Source of the DNA: Podarcis vaucheri
Taxonomy: Eukaryota
Length of the DNA: 64,000 nt
Assembly: GCA_965113315.1 (NCBI GenBank)
Contig: OZ220364.1
Strand: one strand, 5' to 3'
Shown: positions 15,270-48,827 of the stretch, piece after piece
Layout of the letters: every line of letters starts with the position of its first letter
How positions within the stretch are numbered: the first letter of the stretch is position 1
Program-made: the position numbers and the translations under genes
Notes under the pieces: generated by a model
Database searches by the model: none
Told to the model about the DNA's origin: nothing
What the model saw: only the letters and a program-made list of their open reading frames with translations

Positions 15270-15940
15270 TTTATTTAAGTACCACTAAAAGCAACAGCTG
15301 TTGAAGTGTTTTTCCCCCAGTCAGTTTTTCTTCCAAAATAGATTTATGAATTCCATTTATATAACCCAACATTGAAAATAGTTTTATTAAATGGTTCTGT
15401 AATTTCCCTCTGTCACTAAGTGCAATCTTTTAACATGATACCAACGTTTAACTTATTAGGCTATACTAAATTTTTGAAAACTTTTATTGACATTCTTGCT
15501 TTCTGTGCTGTCCATGAGTGGATTGCACACAGTATAAATGTTAATATGACTTTTTAAAGAGTTTAATTATTCCGAATTAGCATATCATTCTTTTATGTTG
15601 GCTAGCTATTGCTAATCATGTCTAAAACTAGCATAAATGAACTTGCAATCATATGCACATTAACCTGGGAGTAATCCCCACTGAACTCAAGAGAACTTGT
15701 TTTTGAGTAAGCATGCACAGGCTTTAATTTCAGTTTGCACTACATGTACAGAAATCTCATCAAATTAGTCTGTGATACTCTGGAAAAACAGATTAAGGCC
15801 AAAATTCATTCCTCATTAACCAAATGAAGACTGAACATTCTACTTAGAGTGCACTTCCATATTTAGTAACCTTTCTTTGTGGGGATTCACATACTTGGCA
15901 GTGTGGTGCAGAAAAGTAATTAATTCTATTATTCTCAGAA

Positions 15941-16316
15941 AGACAGACCTGTTAGTTTGTTGCAGTGGAAACAACAAAGAATCTTGTGGCACCTGAAAGA
16001 CTAACACAATTATTGTGGTAAAAGCATTTGTGAACTGTATCACCAATGCACATCATTTGGGTGGGGAGTTTGTAAACAATGAGGTCAGAGAGAAATGAAA
16101 TGCAAAAATTATAGTGACAGGGATATTTGCCTGATTAACAATTGTTGATAAAAGCAGTCAATACATTCATAGTGTGATACTGTCTTAGTTCAGTTGTGCC
16201 ATTGGACACCAGCAGTTTATAATTGCAGAGTTGCTTTGAAATGCCTTTGTTCCAGCATGGCCACCTTAAGGTAAATTACAGAGTGTCCTCAGAGGCTGAA
16301 ATATTCCCCCACTGGG
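15941..16316 (-). mobile_element. Old Neptune-type Penelope-like element, 3' part (split by insertion)
   Basis: Minus-strand translation PVGEYFSL*GHSVIYLKVAMLEQRHFK resembles reptile Neptune PVGEHFNLPGHS..DLKVAIL. 15941-16050 resembles the Neptune terminus (CTTGTGGCACCT..AGACTAACA..TTATT). Confidence 0.75.
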
Positions 16317-16339
16317 TATATATATATATATATATATAT

Positions 16340-17119
16340 GCTTTCGTAGATTTTCACGGGTACAGGAATGCAGGTTTTGGTGTCTTCGGGTGTCTTCCCG
16401 TGTAAGAGTCGGGGTGTCTGTGCGACGTTTCGACGAGGTCTCACTCGTCATCTTCAGGCTGGTGCTTTCGGCTTCTTGTTACTGGAACAGAGCAGAATCT
16501 GGTGTTTGAGTTCCTATAAATACTGTTGAGGGGTGTGGTGTATAGCCTCCAACGTTCTGGGCAGAGAGGAAGTTCCTAGATTAGTGTGCCTCTTCTTCTT
16601 TTGTTCCTTAATTACTTGAGGGATATCTTGAGTGATTTCATGAGTGATATTCTGAATACCACTGGGTGGGTCATTAAGTGTAGATTAGTTGCTAAAGCTT
16701 TTGTGTCTTGACCTCTTGAGCTTGTGAAGAGTTTTTCTGAGAAGATGGCTGTGCTGCATTTAGTTGTGCTCTGGCTTGGCTTCGTGTATAGGGGCGAGCT
16801 GTGGTTTTGTGCCTTGTGCCAGCCAGATCTGTGTAGGGATTGCAGGGGGGTGCAGCATCCGGAGGTGCCAATATAGTTTGGCTACTGGATGGAGTCTGTA
16901 ATATGTCTGTGGAGAGGGTCTGGGTTTGGGTCTGGTGTGGTTGATTGGTGACGGCGTTCTGTGTGCCTCTGGTTCTGGTGTCGGTTTTTGTGGGGAGGGC
17001 TAATTTCCAGATGTCTGGCAGGCGGGACGTGTCGTCACGCTTGTTCATGTTGTGAGGGTGTTTCTCTATCTCGATGGCTTCCATGATTATTCTCTTGTGG
17101 TGATGTTCCATGTTAAAGA
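16340..17119 (-). mobile_element. Penelope-like element (Poseidon/Penelope-type), 5'-truncated 3' half; left arm of palindrome
   Basis: Minus-strand ORF end reads NMEHHHKRIIMEAIEIEKHPHNMNKRDD, the C-terminal part of a Penelope GIY-YIG domain (R..xEAIEI..N). It is followed by a 3' region with a hammerhead motif and ends in (TA)n at 16317-16339. Confidence 0.9.
16422..16459 (-). ncRNA. Minimal type I hammerhead ribozyme (Penelope-associated), intact stem II
   Basis: Minus strand reads GC-CUGAAGA-U-GACGAG-UGAGAC-CUCGUC-GAAA-C-GUC-GC. It has the conserved cores CUGAnGA and GAAA, a perfect 6-bp stem II, a palindromic ACGU stem III and a GUC cleavage triplet. Stem I is only 2 bp. Confidence 0.75.
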
Positions 17120-17947
17120 AGAAAAAACTTCCTCTCTTTTCCAACACATGAAAGAAACAGGACACGAAATTAATTTTGCAGATTCCAAATTGCTCTTTAA
17201 CATGGAACATCACCACAAGAGAATAATCATGGAAGCCATCGAGATAGAGAAACACCCTCACAACATGAACAAGCGTGACGACACGTCCCGCCTGCCAGAC
17301 ATCTGGAAATTAGCCCTCCCCACAAAAACCGACACCAGAACCAGAGGCACACAGAACGCCGTCACCAATCAACCACACCAGACCCAAACCCAGACCCTCT
17401 CCACAGACATATTACAGACTCCATCCAGTAGCCAAACTATATTGGCACCTCCGGATGCTGCACCCCCCTGCAATCCCTACACAGATCTGGCTGGCACAAG
17501 GCACAAAACCACAGCTCGCCCCTATACACGAAGCCAAGCCAGAGCACAACTAAATGCAGCACAGCCATCTTCTCAGAAAAACTCTTCACAAGCTCAAGAG
17601 GTCAAGACACAAAAGCTTTAGCAACTAATCTACACTTAATGACCCACCCAGTGGTATTCAGAATATCACTCATGAAATCACTCAAGATATCCCTCAAGTA
17701 ATTAAGGAACAAAAGAAGAAGAGGCACACTAATCTAGGAACTTCCTCTCTGCCCAGAACGTTGGAGGCTATACACCACACCCCTCAACAGTATTTATAGG
17801 AACTCAAACACCAGATTCTGCTCTGTTCCAGTAACAAGAAGCCGAAAGCACCAGCCTGAAGATGAGGGGTGAGACCTCGTCGAAACGTCGCACAGACCAC
17901 AGACACCCCGACTCTTACACGGGAAGACACCCGAAGACACCAAAACC

Positions 17948-17952
<5 letters not shown>
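17120..17952 (+). mobile_element. Penelope-like element (Poseidon/Penelope-type), 5'-truncated 3' half; 74-bp spacer plus right arm of palindrome
   Basis: Translation KTSSLFQHMKETGHEINFADSKLLFNMEHHHKRIIMEAIEIEKHPHNMNKRDD matches the Penelope GIY-YIG C-terminal pattern (S..H....GH...F.......R...EAIEI.....N). Stop at 17621. Ends in (AT)n at 17951-17984. Confidence 0.92.
17854..17891 (+). ncRNA. Minimal type I hammerhead ribozyme (Penelope-associated), weakened stem II
   Basis: GC-CTGAAGA-T-GAGGGG-TGAGAC-CTCGTC-GAAA-C-GTC-GC. Two substitutions relative to the left copy give a G-G mismatch and a G-U pair in stem II. Confidence 0.65.
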
Positions 17953-17984
<32 letters not shown>

Positions 17985-17987
<3 letters not shown>

Positions 17988-18165
17988 ATTTCTGAAAACA
18001 TTCTTTGGTGTAGAGGTGAGCATGTTTATCCTATGTAGAATGCAGAATGACACTGTTGGAAGATTAAATCCTGTATCACCTTGGAAGATGTGCTGGTGAA
18101 TTAATTCTGGATGTTGCAGATGACATTATTAGGCCCTGTAATAGCTCCAGCATTTATTTTTGTCT
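17985..18165 (-). mobile_element. Old Neptune-type Penelope-like element, GIY-YIG catalytic part (5' side of the split)
   Basis: Minus-strand translation ITGPNNVICNIQN*FTSTSSKVIQDLIFQQCHSAFYIG*TCSPLHQRM is a decayed copy of the Neptune motif GPN..FTC.S.NVIY.I.CQQC.A.YIGQT..L..R. Confidence 0.8.
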
Positions 18166-19192
18166 CCTACAAACATGTTGTTTGCAATACCATACTGGCG
18201 GTGCAAATTCTGTATCATTTCTTTACCTTTGCCTTAAATAAATCCCACATTTAAGATGTTAGGCCATTTTGCACATTATGCGAAGGCAAACATGGGCTTG
18301 TTATCAACTCTACAAGGAGTTTCAGGGAATCATATGCTCCTGATAAGTTATCCAACTAAGTAATACTCAGAACAGACCCTCTACTCTGAATGTGACTAAC
18401 ACTGGATGTCACCTAATGCAACAGGGTACACAGTCAGGCTCACTTAAATTCATGAGAGCAATGGGTTTAGGTGCACTTAATTCTGCACAGGTTTGGACTG
18501 AAAATGTACAGTGAATCAGAGAAACAGCACAATCTTATGCATGCCTGGGGCTTACGTCCAGTAAGTATGTATAGAACTGCAGCCCAGATCTGTCCTGTGG
18601 GGATTTTACTACCTCCTCCCTTCCTCATTTTGCATTAAAATATAACAACTATAAGAGTAAGTCAAGCATTGATATCGGTATAGTTTTACACTGAAATTAA
18701 TACATTGTTTTCCAAGAGCATCTCAACAGGGCTTTCATATCAGCTCTCAGGTCTAATTTATATGGAAAGCTCACATTACGGTGAGGTAGATAGTGATTAT
18801 ATATATATATATATATAATCACTATGATGACTGCAAAACAAACAAAAGGATTCAGTGAAAAGTTTACTCCCAGCTCTCTTTAATTCAAGCTAGGGACACG
18901 CTCCTTCCTGCCCACCTTATGCCCAGTCTTTCAGGATACTTGTTTAGTGTCTTCTAAAAAAAGAAAAGAAAAAAAGAATTAACTGATCACAGATGTCTGA
19001 ACTGGTAGTAATTAGGAACCCAATTAACCTTGATAATGAATGCATTCTCTTTTGTGAATTGACAGATTATTCTGATCATAAACTCTGTAGCCACTCAACC
19101 CTATCAAATGCCCTTGCAACACTGCTATGGGAATGCAGGTAGGATAGTGAAAAAGTATTTAATATCTATACATCAACACAAACAGAATTTAG

Positions 19193-46500: not shown

Positions 46501-47306
46501 ATGAAAATTGATCAGTATTTTTGTGCACATTTTTCCTGATATACACATCTGCATGCAATGTTACCTAATATATACAGTACACATTTTTGCAAAGCAATCC
46601 CCCCTAATATATGTATGCACACTTTACCCTAGACTATGCAATTTTGTATACGTTACTGGGCTGGAGAACCACACTGCCAAATTTAGATAAATGCTGCGAT
46701 TCAGTAATATTGTTTCAGAAAGTGCAAATTAGATAAATTCATCTGTAAACGCAAACTGAATTGGGAGCCTGAATCTAGCATAATCAGCCAGGAATATATG
46801 ATCCTATTGTTTGTCTTAAAATTTGCTTGGAAATGACAAGGAACCCTGAATCCACTTCAAAATGTTCTCTCTCTCTTCTAATTTGTTTTATTCTATATTA
46901 TTTTGTGTATGCGTGTTTTCTAACAGCTGCTTGGGAATTGGGGTGGGAGAAAGGCAGTTTGTTTCCCAGGCAACCAAACAAGGCATTCTTAGTGGCTGCA
47001 CCAATATCGTGGAACAACTTACCCCATGAAAAACAGATGACCCCCCCCCCCTTCACTTGTCTTTTACCAATCACTAAAGACATTTTTTATTTTGGCTGTC
47101 TCTTTGCCTGATCTGTATCTGCTATCAAGGCCATATTTTATTTGTGGACTCTGCTTTTCTTGTTTATTTAATGTTATTTTATGACATTGTCATCTTAAAT
47201 TGCTATAATCTGCCCTGAGTGAAGCACAGGCACTTCAAGGGCAGAGAAGCCCTAAATAAATAAGTAGTAGTGGGAATTGCAAGCATACACACACTATTAC
47301 TTTTGC

Positions 47307-47505
47307 TTTCTTCCAGTTGCACCTTAGAGACCAACAACCAAGTTTGTTATTGGTATGAGCTTTCATGTGCATGCACACTTCTTCAGATACCTACACGAAA
47401 GCTAATACCAATAACAAACTTAGTTGGTCTCTAAGGTGCTACTGGAAGAAATTTTTAATTTTTATTTTGACTTTGGCAGACCAACACTGCTACCTACCTG
47501 TAACT
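47307..47505. mobile_element. Short fold-back Neptune-type Penelope-like remnant
   Basis: Inverted arms about 47307-47368 and 47393-47451 (CCAG.TGCACCTTAGAGACCAAC..AAGTTTGTTATTGGTAT.AGCTTTC and its complement). The Neptune-like terminus continues to about 47505. Confidence 0.85.
47353..47390 (-). ncRNA. Minimal type I hammerhead ribozyme (Neptune-type)
   Basis: Minus strand reads GUAU-CUGAAGA-A-GUGUGCAUGCACAU-GAAA-G-CUC-AUAC: 4-bp stem I (GUAU/AUAC), stem II, palindromic AGCU stem III and a CUC cleavage triplet. Confidence 0.8.
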
Positions 47506-48827
47506 AGAACTTTTGCTTTCATATGACTGCTTGCCTGCTTGCCAGCTGACAATGATGTTTGACTTTCAACAACAGAAATCACTACCTCCATCCTACCTCT
47601 CAAGTTGGAATAATTCAGCCACTGAAGAAAGACATGCACAACATGTGTCAGATTGAAACCACGCAATATCCAGTAGCTGAGGAAAATGTTCCCACAATGT
47701 ATGGGAAAGGATGTAACATTCATGAAACCTTCAGGAGCCAATTTTTGTTATTGTTTCCAAAGAGTCTGGAAACAAGTATAAAACGCCTTTCATTCATTTC
47801 TGAACCATCTGCATCTGCTTTTGTGAAGGTTGCCGCATTAACATGGCACAGATACATGCCACCACTTTGGGACATCATGGCTTCCTCAGGCTTCCATGTG
47901 GTGGAAGAAATTGGGCCAAGAGTTGCCTTGCCTGATGAATGCCAGCCACAACAGTATCAAAAGCAGGAAATTGACTCCAGACTCCAGTTTAAGTAATTTT
48001 GGGCATTTAATCATTTAAATGTGTTCTATGCTATAAATGCGGAACACTTGGGGAGGAAATAACATAATGGGGACAATAATGAGCTTCTCCTGATTTTTCT
48101 GCAGCTCTGAAAAGCCCCTTACCTGAGTCCTTGTAGTGATGAGCCCCATTAATGCATTTAATATTCATTTCTCTCCTCTCCTCTATTCCTCATTAATTTC
48201 AACATTATTCACTTTGGTCCTGTATCTGATCAGGAGCATCTCACTGTAAGCTGGTTTTATTGGAAAAGAGTGAAACTCTTCAGCAGGAAAGATATAGGTA
48301 ATGCTTCATATTCCTTTCTCTGATTGCTTAGCAACAGTGGTTGAGTGTCCTTGGCAACATTGCTGCCTACCAAAGCCTCATAACAGCATCTCCACATTTA
48401 GCTTTCTAACTTTCCTTATCAATGTTAGACTGACTTACCTTTTTTTGAGAAAAACAATAATGAAAGCTAAGAGTCTGGGTGTCCTATTGACCTGGGGCCC
48501 AGTACAAGTATATCCTCCTGTCAAGCCTGACAGGGAATGCAGGAAAAACCAGGAAATGAGCAGCAACTTCTTAAGCACCTCCAGTGAGAGTGAGCTGGTT
48601 GGGGAGATATGACTGCTGTTGACATTTATGAGATTTTGGTGGCAGTTAAAGAACTAGATTTTGGCTCAGCCTTCACTGGAGCTTATTGACAAATTTCCAC
48701 TACCCTGCCTCCAACACCTTAGGCTGCCACACTCTGCTTAAATCTTGGCCTGACCTGGTCTTTCCCCCTCCTATCAATTTCTCTGGCATGGCAATGTGGT
48801 GCTCCCTGATGCTACCTTACTCTAGAT

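What the first reader, a model, noticed from the sequence alone, without database searches (positions are those of the whole stretch)
16340..17952. 1.6-kb near-perfect palindromic Penelope-like insertion with a hammerhead ribozyme in each arm
Seen: arms 16368-17119 (752 bp) and 17194-17952 (759 bp) are reverse complements around a 74-bp spacer. Both point outward and each carries the GIY-YIG C-terminus, 3' region and a CUGAAGA...GAAAC-GUC hammerhead. No RT is present. Established: Penelope-like elements make inverted pseudo-LTR arrangements and carry minimal hammerheads thought to act as dimers. Inference: transcription from either side gives a ~750-bp dsRNA hairpin whose ribozyme is base-paired to its own antisense copy. 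Such a locus could be a self-silencing endo-siRNA source, an A-to-I editing substrate, a non-autonomous mobile unit or a cruciform-prone fragile site.
Basis: partly seen in the sequence, partly recalled or inferred. Interest (0 to 1): 0.85.

Follow-up and report, generated by a model that had tools for sequence, protein, structure and literature searches.

The report
Head-to-head Penelope retrotransposon insertion
This 1.6-kb palindrome is real, but it is an ordinary young insertion of a very abundant lizard Penelope-like retrotransposon: two truncated copies placed head-to-head in a (TA)n microsatellite, a habit already described for these elements.

Summary
Arms 16368-17119 and 17194-17952 are reverse complements. 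They differ by two substitutions and one 7-nt duplication.

The "74-nt spacer" is not a spacer. It is in-frame coding sequence of the longer right-hand copy. Each copy holds only these parts of an RT + GIY-YIG Penelope-like element (PLE):
- the last 140-166 codons of the ORF
- a roughly 235-nt pseudo-LTR
- a minimal hammerhead motif that overlaps the next ORF's ATG
- the first 84 nt (right copy) or 112 nt (left copy) of that ORF

The two outer ends fall where the optional "tail" (nt ~85-119) begins and ends in Poseidon_Ac of Anolis. That tail was shown in vitro to lie between two internal reverse-transcription start sites. The Poseidon_Ac protein also cuts and extends both DNA strands.

A contig from a closely related organism joins the two flanks with only 34 letters between them, so that organism has an empty site. 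The family is extremely high-copy, and it is expressed in that related organism.

Best reading: one insertion event primed on both strands of a (TA)n target. The inverted 5'-truncated copy, one-sided tail and (TA)n target are all published PLE features. No evidence was found for or against hairpin-RNA function. The scan's unchecked notes list similar fold-back PLE insertions elsewhere in this genome. Interest is low.

The parts
16317..16339 (.). Left (TA)n target microsatellite
   Evidence: Sequence. The empty-site contig of run X5 has only 34 letters between 16305 and 17993.
16340..16367 (-). 28-nt 'tail', present on the left copy only. It equals nt 85-112 of the next-unit ORF, and its outer end is the long-form terminus.
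   Evidence: Alignment of the arms and coordinates. It matches the position of the Poseidon_Ac tail, nt ~85-119 (PMC11167929 Fig. S2 legend).
16368..16451 (-). First 84 nt of the PLE ORF (ATG at 16451-16449). This is the pLTR part downstream of the start codon.
   Evidence: ORF listing. The ATG sits at the start of hammerhead helix II, as described for Poseidon_Ac.
16424..16457 (-). Minimal type-I hammerhead motif, left copy. It has the CUGAAGA core, a bulged U, a 6-bp helix II (GACGAG/CUCGUC) and GAAAC-GUC. The predicted cut is after 16424.
   Evidence: Pattern search, fold and comparison with the Poseidon_Ac consensus. Not detected by Rfam.
16458..16691 (-). Pseudo-LTR / 3' untranslated region of the left copy
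   Evidence: It lies between the stop codon and the hammerhead.
16692..17119 (-). C-terminal coding part of the left copy (endonuclease C-terminal half plus tail, stop codon 16692-16694), 5'-truncated at about 17119
   Evidence: tblastn of P0001, P0003 and P0012.
17115..17119 (.). AAAGA, a 5-nt overlap that fits both copies (microhomology at the head-to-head junction)
   Evidence: Loose ends at 17115 show that longer family copies continue upstream from this point. The tblastn match of P0003 starts at 17115.
17120..17621 (+). The stop codon is at 17619-17621.
   Evidence: In-frame ORF. phmmer gave 176 hits. BLASTP to P0012 residues 734-816 gave 49% identity.
17622..17855 (+). Pseudo-LTR / 3' untranslated region of the right copy
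   Evidence: Mirror image of 16458-16691.
17856..17889 (+). Hammerhead motif of the right copy. The helix II 5' strand is changed to GAGGGG (17866, 17868). The predicted cut is after 17889.
   Evidence: The variant looks derived, because a divergent relative (P0001) keeps the left-arm version.
17891..17897 (+). 7-nt tandem duplication (CACAGAC) starting 1 nt after the predicted cleavage site. It shifts the frame of the next-unit ORF start.
17862..17952 (+). First 84 nt (+7) of the PLE ORF, ending at the short-form terminus with no tail
   Evidence: The mirror terminus at 16368 is joined directly to (TA)n in many other family copies (loose ends: X1 18 contigs, X6 7 contigs, X23 7 reads).
17951..17984 (.). 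Right (TA)17 target microsatellite
   Evidence: Tandem Repeats Finder.

Best explanation
This is one retrotransposition event of a young, very abundant Poseidon-type Penelope-like element into a (TA)n microsatellite. The element's dimeric RT-endonuclease cut both DNA strands, and each 3'-OH primed reverse transcription of element RNA. One priming started at the distal internal start site (ORF nt 112, left copy, with the 28-nt tail). The other started at the proximal site (ORF nt 84, right copy, no tail). Both cDNAs ran inward for about 780 and 830 nt and stopped early. Their 5'-truncated ends were joined at a 5-nt microhomology (AAAGA). The result is a dead, RT-less head-to-head pair. The palindrome is therefore a by-product of integration. 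The hammerheads are passenger parts of the pseudo-LTR. Shown here: the anatomy, the homology, the empty site in a relative, and the family's abundance and expression. Taken from published in-vitro work on a related element: both-strand priming and the two start sites. Inferred: that a single event made both arms.
For: (1) Anatomy: two outward-pointing 5'-truncated copies abut with no target DNA between them.
(2) The coding part is homologous to the C-terminus of RT + GIY-YIG proteins.
(3) The outer ends lie at ORF nt 84 and 112. The Poseidon_Ac tail spans nt ~85-119 and lies between two RT start sites, and the Poseidon_Ac protein cleaves and extends both strands (PMC11167929).
(4) An inverted 5'-truncated copy, a 30-40-bp tail at one end only and (TA)n targets are listed as standard PLE features (PMC8557442).
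(5) Empty site: one 1446-nt contig of run X5 covers 15800-16305 and 17993-18500 with 34 letters between them. Flank divergence is about 0.6%.
(6) The short-form end joined to (TA)n recurs in many other copies (loose ends at 16368).
(7) The arms differ in termini, in one indel and in two bases, so neither arm is a simple copy of the other.
Against: No read or contig was seen to span the central junction or a flank-arm junction. Logan contigs break in (TA)n and in the repeat. The best holder, X1, may be the assembly's own sample. A target-site duplication cannot be read in a microsatellite. About 65% of laid family contigs are at least 99% alike in X1, so 99.7% arm identity does not by itself prove one event. 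The clustering of all arm differences in the hammerhead region is not explained by this model alone. The both-strand priming evidence comes from a different PLE family, studied in vitro.
Confidence: 0.8

Rival explanations
1. Two separate insertions of the same family hit the same (TA)n hot spot in opposite orientation at different times, and happen to abut at their 5' ends.
For: (TA)n is a preferred target and the family is very abundant and young. Two independent copies could therefore be about 99.7% alike. The arms carry different hammerhead variants and different termini.
Against: No (TA)n or other target DNA remains between the two 5' ends, and the junction shows a 5-nt microhomology. Both arms are absent together in the relative's empty site. 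Adjacent inverted truncated copies are a known single-unit outcome for PLEs.
Confidence: 0.08
2. A single cDNA snapped back on itself. Hairpin-primed second-strand synthesis, or an RT template switch onto its own product, made the second arm as a copy of the first.
For: The arms are nearly identical over 752 nt and the unpaired centre is short.
Against: A self-templated arm should share the tail, the 7-nt segment and both bases. Instead one arm has a 28-nt tail and the other ends at the recurrent short-form terminus, which is joined to (TA)n just as in many other copies. The 74-nt offset is ordinary upstream element sequence, not a loop.
Confidence: 0.05
3. This is an assembly artefact, either a fold-back chimeric read or a mis-join of two repeat copies.
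For: PLE complex structures are known to trouble assemblies. No spanning read was seen here.
Against: The palindrome does not extend into the flanks. The two flanks are different single-copy sequences that are contiguous in a relative's contig. Each end is a bona fide element terminus in (TA)n. The arms are asymmetric. Run X1 holds 0.91 of the sampled words of the stretch, though it may be the same sample as the assembly.
Confidence: 0.04
4. Whatever its origin, the locus now works as a hairpin-RNA gene. Read-through transcripts fold into about 750 bp of dsRNA that is diced into small RNAs against the family, or is A-to-I edited.
For: A read-through RNA of either strand is predicted to form 751 inter-arm pairs, at -1586 kcal/mol against -155 for one arm alone. 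The family is expressed (X23), so targets exist.
Against: No RNA reads lay on either flank in the one RNA run laid. That animal lacks the insertion, so this is not a real test. The insertion is very young and absent from a close relative, so there has been no time for selection to show. Many such pairs appear to exist in the genome (notes, unchecked; a second one in this window). This locus is therefore not special.
Confidence: 0.1

Closest known systems
Poseidon_Ac (PAc), the Penelope/Poseidon-clade PLE of Anolis carolinensis (Frangieh et al. 2024, PMC11167929)
   Same: The pLTR layout is the same. The hammerhead core lies just before the ORF, with the ATG formed by core A9, the bulged U and G10.1. 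The predicted cut is 28 nt from the A of the ATG. An optional tail begins at ORF nt 85. Targets are AT-rich. The C-terminal endonuclease motifs are alike (H..GH, EAIEI.KH, N.N), as seen by eye.
   Different: It is a different family. The nucleotide sequence is unrelated outside the motifs. All six helix II pairs differ while pairing is kept (GACGAG/CUCGUC here, GCCUGC/GUGGGC in PAc). The tail is 28 nt here against about 34 nt. No alignment was run, because the consensus exists only as text in the paper.
Generic complex PLE insertion unit (Craig et al. 2021, PMC8557442; Evgen'ev & Arkhipova 2005, as cited there)
   Same: It shows strong 5' truncation, an inverted 5'-truncated copy adjacent at the 5' end, a 30-40-bp tail at one end only, a (TA)n insertion bias and a hammerhead in the pLTR.
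   Different: There is no full-length or partial-tandem copy here. Both members of the pair are short, so the unit is almost a pure palindrome.
Minimal hammerheads of metazoan PLEs (Cervera & De la Pena 2014, PMC4209133)
   Same: The core boxes are present. [quoted passage not shown] That paper already notes pairs of minimal hammerheads 100-700 bp apart on opposite strands.
   Different: Only 2 bp of helix I can be drawn here. The two motifs are about 1.4 kb apart. Activity was not tested, and Rfam models do not score the motif.
L1 twin-priming inversions (Ostertag & Kazazian 2001; recalled from memory, not checked here)
   Same: The second DNA strand is used as a primer during target-primed reverse transcription, which gives an inverted segment joined at microhomology.
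   Different: In twin priming the inverted part comes from a more upstream, non-overlapping stretch of the same RNA. Here both arms cover the same 3' region and both start at the element's own RT initiation sites.
Hairpin-RNA (endo-siRNA) loci of Drosophila and mouse oocytes (recalled from memory, not checked here)
   Same: A long inverted repeat with a short loop could give dsRNA if transcribed.
   Different: No transcription, small RNAs or conservation are shown for this locus.

Membership tests
Penelope-like element (canonical EN+), truncated insertion | ORF homologous to PLE RT + C-terminal GIY-YIG endonuclease proteins | tested here: met
   phmmer gave 176 hits at E<=1e-3. The long hits carry RVT_1 and, in P0050 and P0002, GIY-YIG just upstream of the matched part. 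Identity to P0012 residues 734-816 is 49%. P0003 shows GVYEIPC...YIGQT directly upstream of the part kept here.
Penelope-like element (canonical EN+), truncated insertion | RT domain and GIY / YIG motifs present in this copy | tested here: not met
   Both copies are 5'-truncated downstream of the YIG motif. This makes them dead fragments. It does not exclude them from the family.
Penelope-like element (canonical EN+), truncated insertion | Pseudo-LTR carrying a hammerhead motif | tested here: met
   The motif is found once per arm, with 0 expected by chance. Its position relative to the ATG is the same as in Poseidon_Ac.
Penelope-like element (canonical EN+), truncated insertion | Optional 30-40-bp tail at one end only | tested here: met
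   A 28-nt extension at 16340-16367 is present on the left copy only, at ORF nt 85-112. The PAc tail is at nt ~85-119.
Penelope-like element (canonical EN+), truncated insertion | Inverted 5'-truncated copy adjacent; AT-rich / (TA)n target | tested here: met
   Empty (TA)n site in a relative. Literature.
Hammerhead ribozyme (type I, minimal PLE variant) | Conserved core CUGANGA ... GAAA ... UH | tested here: met
   Both arms.
Hammerhead ribozyme (type I, minimal PLE variant) | Helix II closed by G10.1-C11.1 | tested here: met
   The left arm has 6 Watson-Crick pairs. The right arm has one mismatch and one wobble in that register, and its predicted fold shifts to a 7-bp helix that takes in core G8-A9.
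Hammerhead ribozyme (type I, minimal PLE variant) | Helix I | tested here: inconclusive
   Only 2 pairs (GC/GC) can be drawn by eye. MFE and cofold predictions do not return the hammerhead fold, and z-scores are about 0. A 2-bp helix I is reported for D. virilis PLEs.
Hammerhead ribozyme (type I, minimal PLE variant) | Match to the curated Rfam hammerhead models | tested here: not met
   No hammerhead family was reported at gathering score or at E<=10. This is expected for loop-less helix III variants, but it is still a negative result.
Hammerhead ribozyme (type I, minimal PLE variant) | Self-cleavage | not testable with these tools
   Published minimal PLE hammerheads cleave poorly, as dimers or with protein help.
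Hairpin-RNA / endo-siRNA locus | Transcription through the inverted repeat, and small RNAs from it | tested here: inconclusive
   No reads lay on the flanks in run X23, but that organism has the empty site. No small-RNA data are available.
L1-type twin-priming inversion | Inverted segment derived from a different, more 5' part of the template | tested here: not met
   Both arms cover the same 3' region.

The most novel reading that the evidence does not exclude
The arm differences are the two helix II substitutions and a 7-nt duplication that begins 1 nt after the predicted cleavage site. These could be a scar left when reverse transcriptase crossed a ribozyme-cleaved or tightly folded template and switched templates there. 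If so, paired arms made in one event would be natural records of hammerhead action during PLE retrotransposition in vivo. They would also help explain the reported hypervariability of PLE hammerheads.
Probability: 0.1. Interest if true: 0.6.

Novelty: already known. Interest (0 to 1): 0.2.

Why it matters
Mainly as a clean annotation. The locus is a dead, recent PLE insertion and not a new kind of element or gene. It does have a modest use. It is a natural example in which the two ends of one insertion sit at the two reverse-transcription start sites defined in vitro for a related anole element. That supports both-strand priming in vivo. Paired arms of this sort could be mined genome-wide to measure errors made during a single retrotransposition event, including the excess of changes in the ribozyme. 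Long perfect inverted repeats are also expected to be unstable (general knowledge), so the locus could serve as a presence/absence and rearrangement marker between close lizard lineages.

Tried and rejected
- Rfam at gathering score and at E<=10 gave no hammerhead. It returned only generic miRNA-hairpin models matching the palindrome centre and the (TA)n.
- Pfam on the arm ORFs gave nothing significant. The kept piece lies downstream of the GIY-YIG core.
- MFE folding and cofolding of the motif did not return the hammerhead or the ACGU-mediated dimer. Energies were no better than shuffles.
- BLASTP of the 37-aa ORF start against P0012 gave no alignment. The similarity of ENLRK to ESLRQ of Poseidon_Ac is by eye only.
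- No other copy of this family is in the window.
- An exact look-up of the two ATG-started ORFs that cross the central junction found them absent from the protein collection. This says nothing either way.
- The many 'joints' between arm positions in run X1 may be head-to-head junctions of other copies. Their sides are under 30 nt, so I do not count them as evidence.
- No alignment to the Poseidon_Ac consensus was made, because it exists only as text in a paper and was not to be retyped.

Full report
**1. What is there**

The window holds an inverted repeat with arms 16368-17119 and 17194-17952, separated by 74 nt. A global alignment of the two copies finds three differences in 752 aligned positions:
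- substitutions at 16447/17866 and 16445/17868
- a 7-nt tandem duplication (CACAGAC) at 17891-17897 in the right arm

The left copy has 28 further nt at its outer end (16340-16367). Outside lie (TA)n tracts, at 16317-16339 and 17951-17984. No other copy of the sequence is in the window.

**2. The 'spacer' is part of the right copy**

The + strand frame that runs through 17120-17193 continues without a stop into the right arm, up to the stop codon at 17619-17621.
- A phmmer search of this 166-aa piece against 1.8 billion representatives gave 176 hits at E<=1e-3.
- The long hits have an RVT_1 reverse-transcriptase domain. In two hits a GIY-YIG match lies just upstream of the matched part.
- The piece aligns to residues 734-816 of the 841-aa protein P0012 at 49% identity.
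- P0003 shows the GVYEIPC...YIGQT motif immediately before the point where the right copy begins. Its tblastn match starts at 17115.

Each arm therefore keeps only the C-terminal half of the endonuclease domain and the ORF's tail. It keeps no RT and no GIY or YIG motif.

Loose ends of contigs and RNA reads at 17115 show how longer family copies continue upstream. Positions 17115-17119 (AAAGA) fit both copies, giving a 5-nt microhomology at the head-to-head junction.

**3. The outer parts are a pseudo-LTR with a minimal hammerhead**

About 235 nt after the stop codon comes this motif: CUGAAGA, a bulged U, a 6-bp helix II (GACGAG/CUCGUC in the left copy), then GAAAC-GUC. The pattern occurs twice in the window, once per arm, against 0 expected.

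It shows three features that Cervera and De la Pena list as characteristic of PLE minimal hammerheads and that were not built into their search:
- the G10.1-C11.1 pair
- a palindromic 15.1-16.1 segment (ACGU) without loop 3

The published Poseidon_Ac consensus of Anolis carolinensis has the same layout, with a different and fully compensated helix II (GCCUGC/GUGGGC). Its start codon is in the same place, formed by A9, the bulged U and G10.1.

Against this:
- Rfam models do not score the motif at all.
- Only 2 bp of helix I can be drawn.
- Thermodynamic folding does not recover the hammerhead.

The motif is thus a PLE-type minimal hammerhead by homology and pattern. Its activity is unknown. Published members cleave weakly, as dimers or with protein help.

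**4. The two outer ends match the two known reverse-transcription start sites**

Counted from the ATG inside the hammerhead, the right copy ends at ORF nt 84 (plus the 7-nt duplication). The left copy ends at nt 112, so the left-only extension is nt 85-112.

For Poseidon_Ac, Frangieh et al. report the following:
- Reverse transcription starts at two adjacent internal sites.
- The optional genomic 'tail' is the sequence between those sites.
- The tail spans roughly nt 85-119.
- The main start lies 111-118 nt into the ORF.
- The full-length protein, predicted to be a dimer, cleaves and extends both DNA strands at AT-rich sites.

Craig et al. list three standard PLE features: an inverted 5'-truncated copy adjacent at the 5' end, a 30-40-bp tail at one end only, and (TA)n targets. 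Every structural feature of this locus is on that list.

**5. Evidence from public reads**

- **Empty site in a relative.** A single 1446-nt contig of run X5 (organism D) covers 15800-16305 and 17993-18500 with only 34 letters between them. The flanks differ from the window by about 0.6%. The 1.6 kb is therefore an insertion into a short (TA)n and is recent or polymorphic.
- **Best holder.** In run X1 (organism A, possibly the assembly's own sample) the flank contigs stop inside the (TA)n.
- **Abundance.** The element part has summed word depths of 1e5-1e6, against about 50-70 in the flanks. The family is therefore extremely abundant, although the tool warns that this figure is not a copy number.
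- **Recurrent short-form end.** At 16368, many contigs and reads are preceded directly by (TA)n (X1 18 contigs, X6 7 contigs, X23 7 reads). The short-form terminus and the (TA)n target recur across the family.
- **Expression.** Stranded RNA reads of organism D map to the family in the orientation expected for sense transcripts. They peak at the pLTR-ORF junction and at the ORF's C-terminus, as reported for Poseidon_Ac. None map to the flanks.
- **Limit.** No contig listed spans a junction of this locus, so the reads neither prove nor contradict the assembly there.

**6. Origin**

The best-supported account is one integration event with priming on both strands, one priming at each RT start site. 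Both cDNAs stopped early and were joined at a microhomology.

A snap-back copy is unlikely, because the arms differ in termini, in an indel and in two bases.

Two separate insertions are possible but need an exact abutment with no target DNA left between them.

An assembly fold-back is unlikely for three reasons. The flanks are distinct single-copy sequences that are contiguous in a relative. Each end is a proper element terminus. The arms are asymmetric.

**7. The arm differences**

All three differences lie within 32 nt, in or next to the hammerhead.
- Under a uniform model, three independent events would cluster within 32 nt with probability 0.005. If the two substitutions count as one event, the figure is 0.08.
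- The probabilities that the events all fall inside the predefined 42-nt hammerhead segment are 2e-4 (three events) and 3e-3 (two events).
- A divergent relative (P0001) reads HQPEDDE through this region, as the left arm does. RNA reads of organism D covering this segment lie on the left-arm version. The right-arm version is therefore probably derived.
- The right-arm version weakens helix II, and its duplication shifts the frame of the next-unit ORF start.

Possible causes:
- two template RNAs from different source copies
- reverse-transcription errors at a structured or cleaved template
- chance

I cannot separate these with one locus.

**8. Function**

A read-through transcript of either strand is predicted to form 751 inter-arm base pairs (-1586 kcal/mol), which would bury the single sense hammerhead. 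That follows from the sequence.

Nothing shows that the locus is transcribed. It is absent from a close relative, so no conservation argument is available.

Similar fold-back PLE insertions are noted elsewhere in this genome by the scan (unchecked). I confirmed a second, much smaller one in this window. This locus is one of many.

The siRNA, editing, mobile-unit and fragile-site ideas remain open, but they are not supported.

**9. Verdict**

This is a real, young, ordinary PLE insertion in its textbook complex form. The kind is already known. The only points of mild interest are the exact match of the two termini to the in-vitro RT start sites and the ribozyme-restricted arm differences.

The junction-spanning test therefore remains to be done.

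Noticed in passing
window 47307-47505: A second, much smaller fold-back PLE remnant of another family. Inverted arms lie at 47307-47368 and 47393-47451. A minimal hammerhead motif (CUGAAGA ... GAAAGCUC) sits on the - strand near the centre. There is a roughly 50-nt extension on the right side only. It is flanked by a direct repeat, ACTTTTGCTTTC, at 47299-47310 and 47509-47520, which is a likely target-site duplication.
   Followed up: partly
window 17817-17911 (and the mirror in the left arm): In run X1 several contigs join various upstream positions (16895, 17184, 17575, 17817) to one fixed position, 17911. That position is 21 nt after the predicted hammerhead cut. This could mark a recurrent breakpoint or template-jump site in other family copies. 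The matching sides are under 30 nt, so it may be noise.
   Followed up: no
window 16421 (left arm, third nt after the predicted cleavage site): A common family variant (T>G on the + strand) is seen in 26 contigs of X1, in all 18 contigs of X6 laid at that position and in all RNA reads of X23. The window's state here is therefore the minority form in the family.
   Followed up: no
window 16034: The contig of organism D (run X5) carries a 27-nt insertion relative to the window, just left of the locus. This is an indel polymorphism or divergence in the flank.
   Followed up: no
window 16615-16650 and mirror 17663-17698: A short 12-nt tandem repeat (about 3 copies, CTTGAGTGATAT) lies inside the pseudo-LTR of the element.
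   Followed up: no
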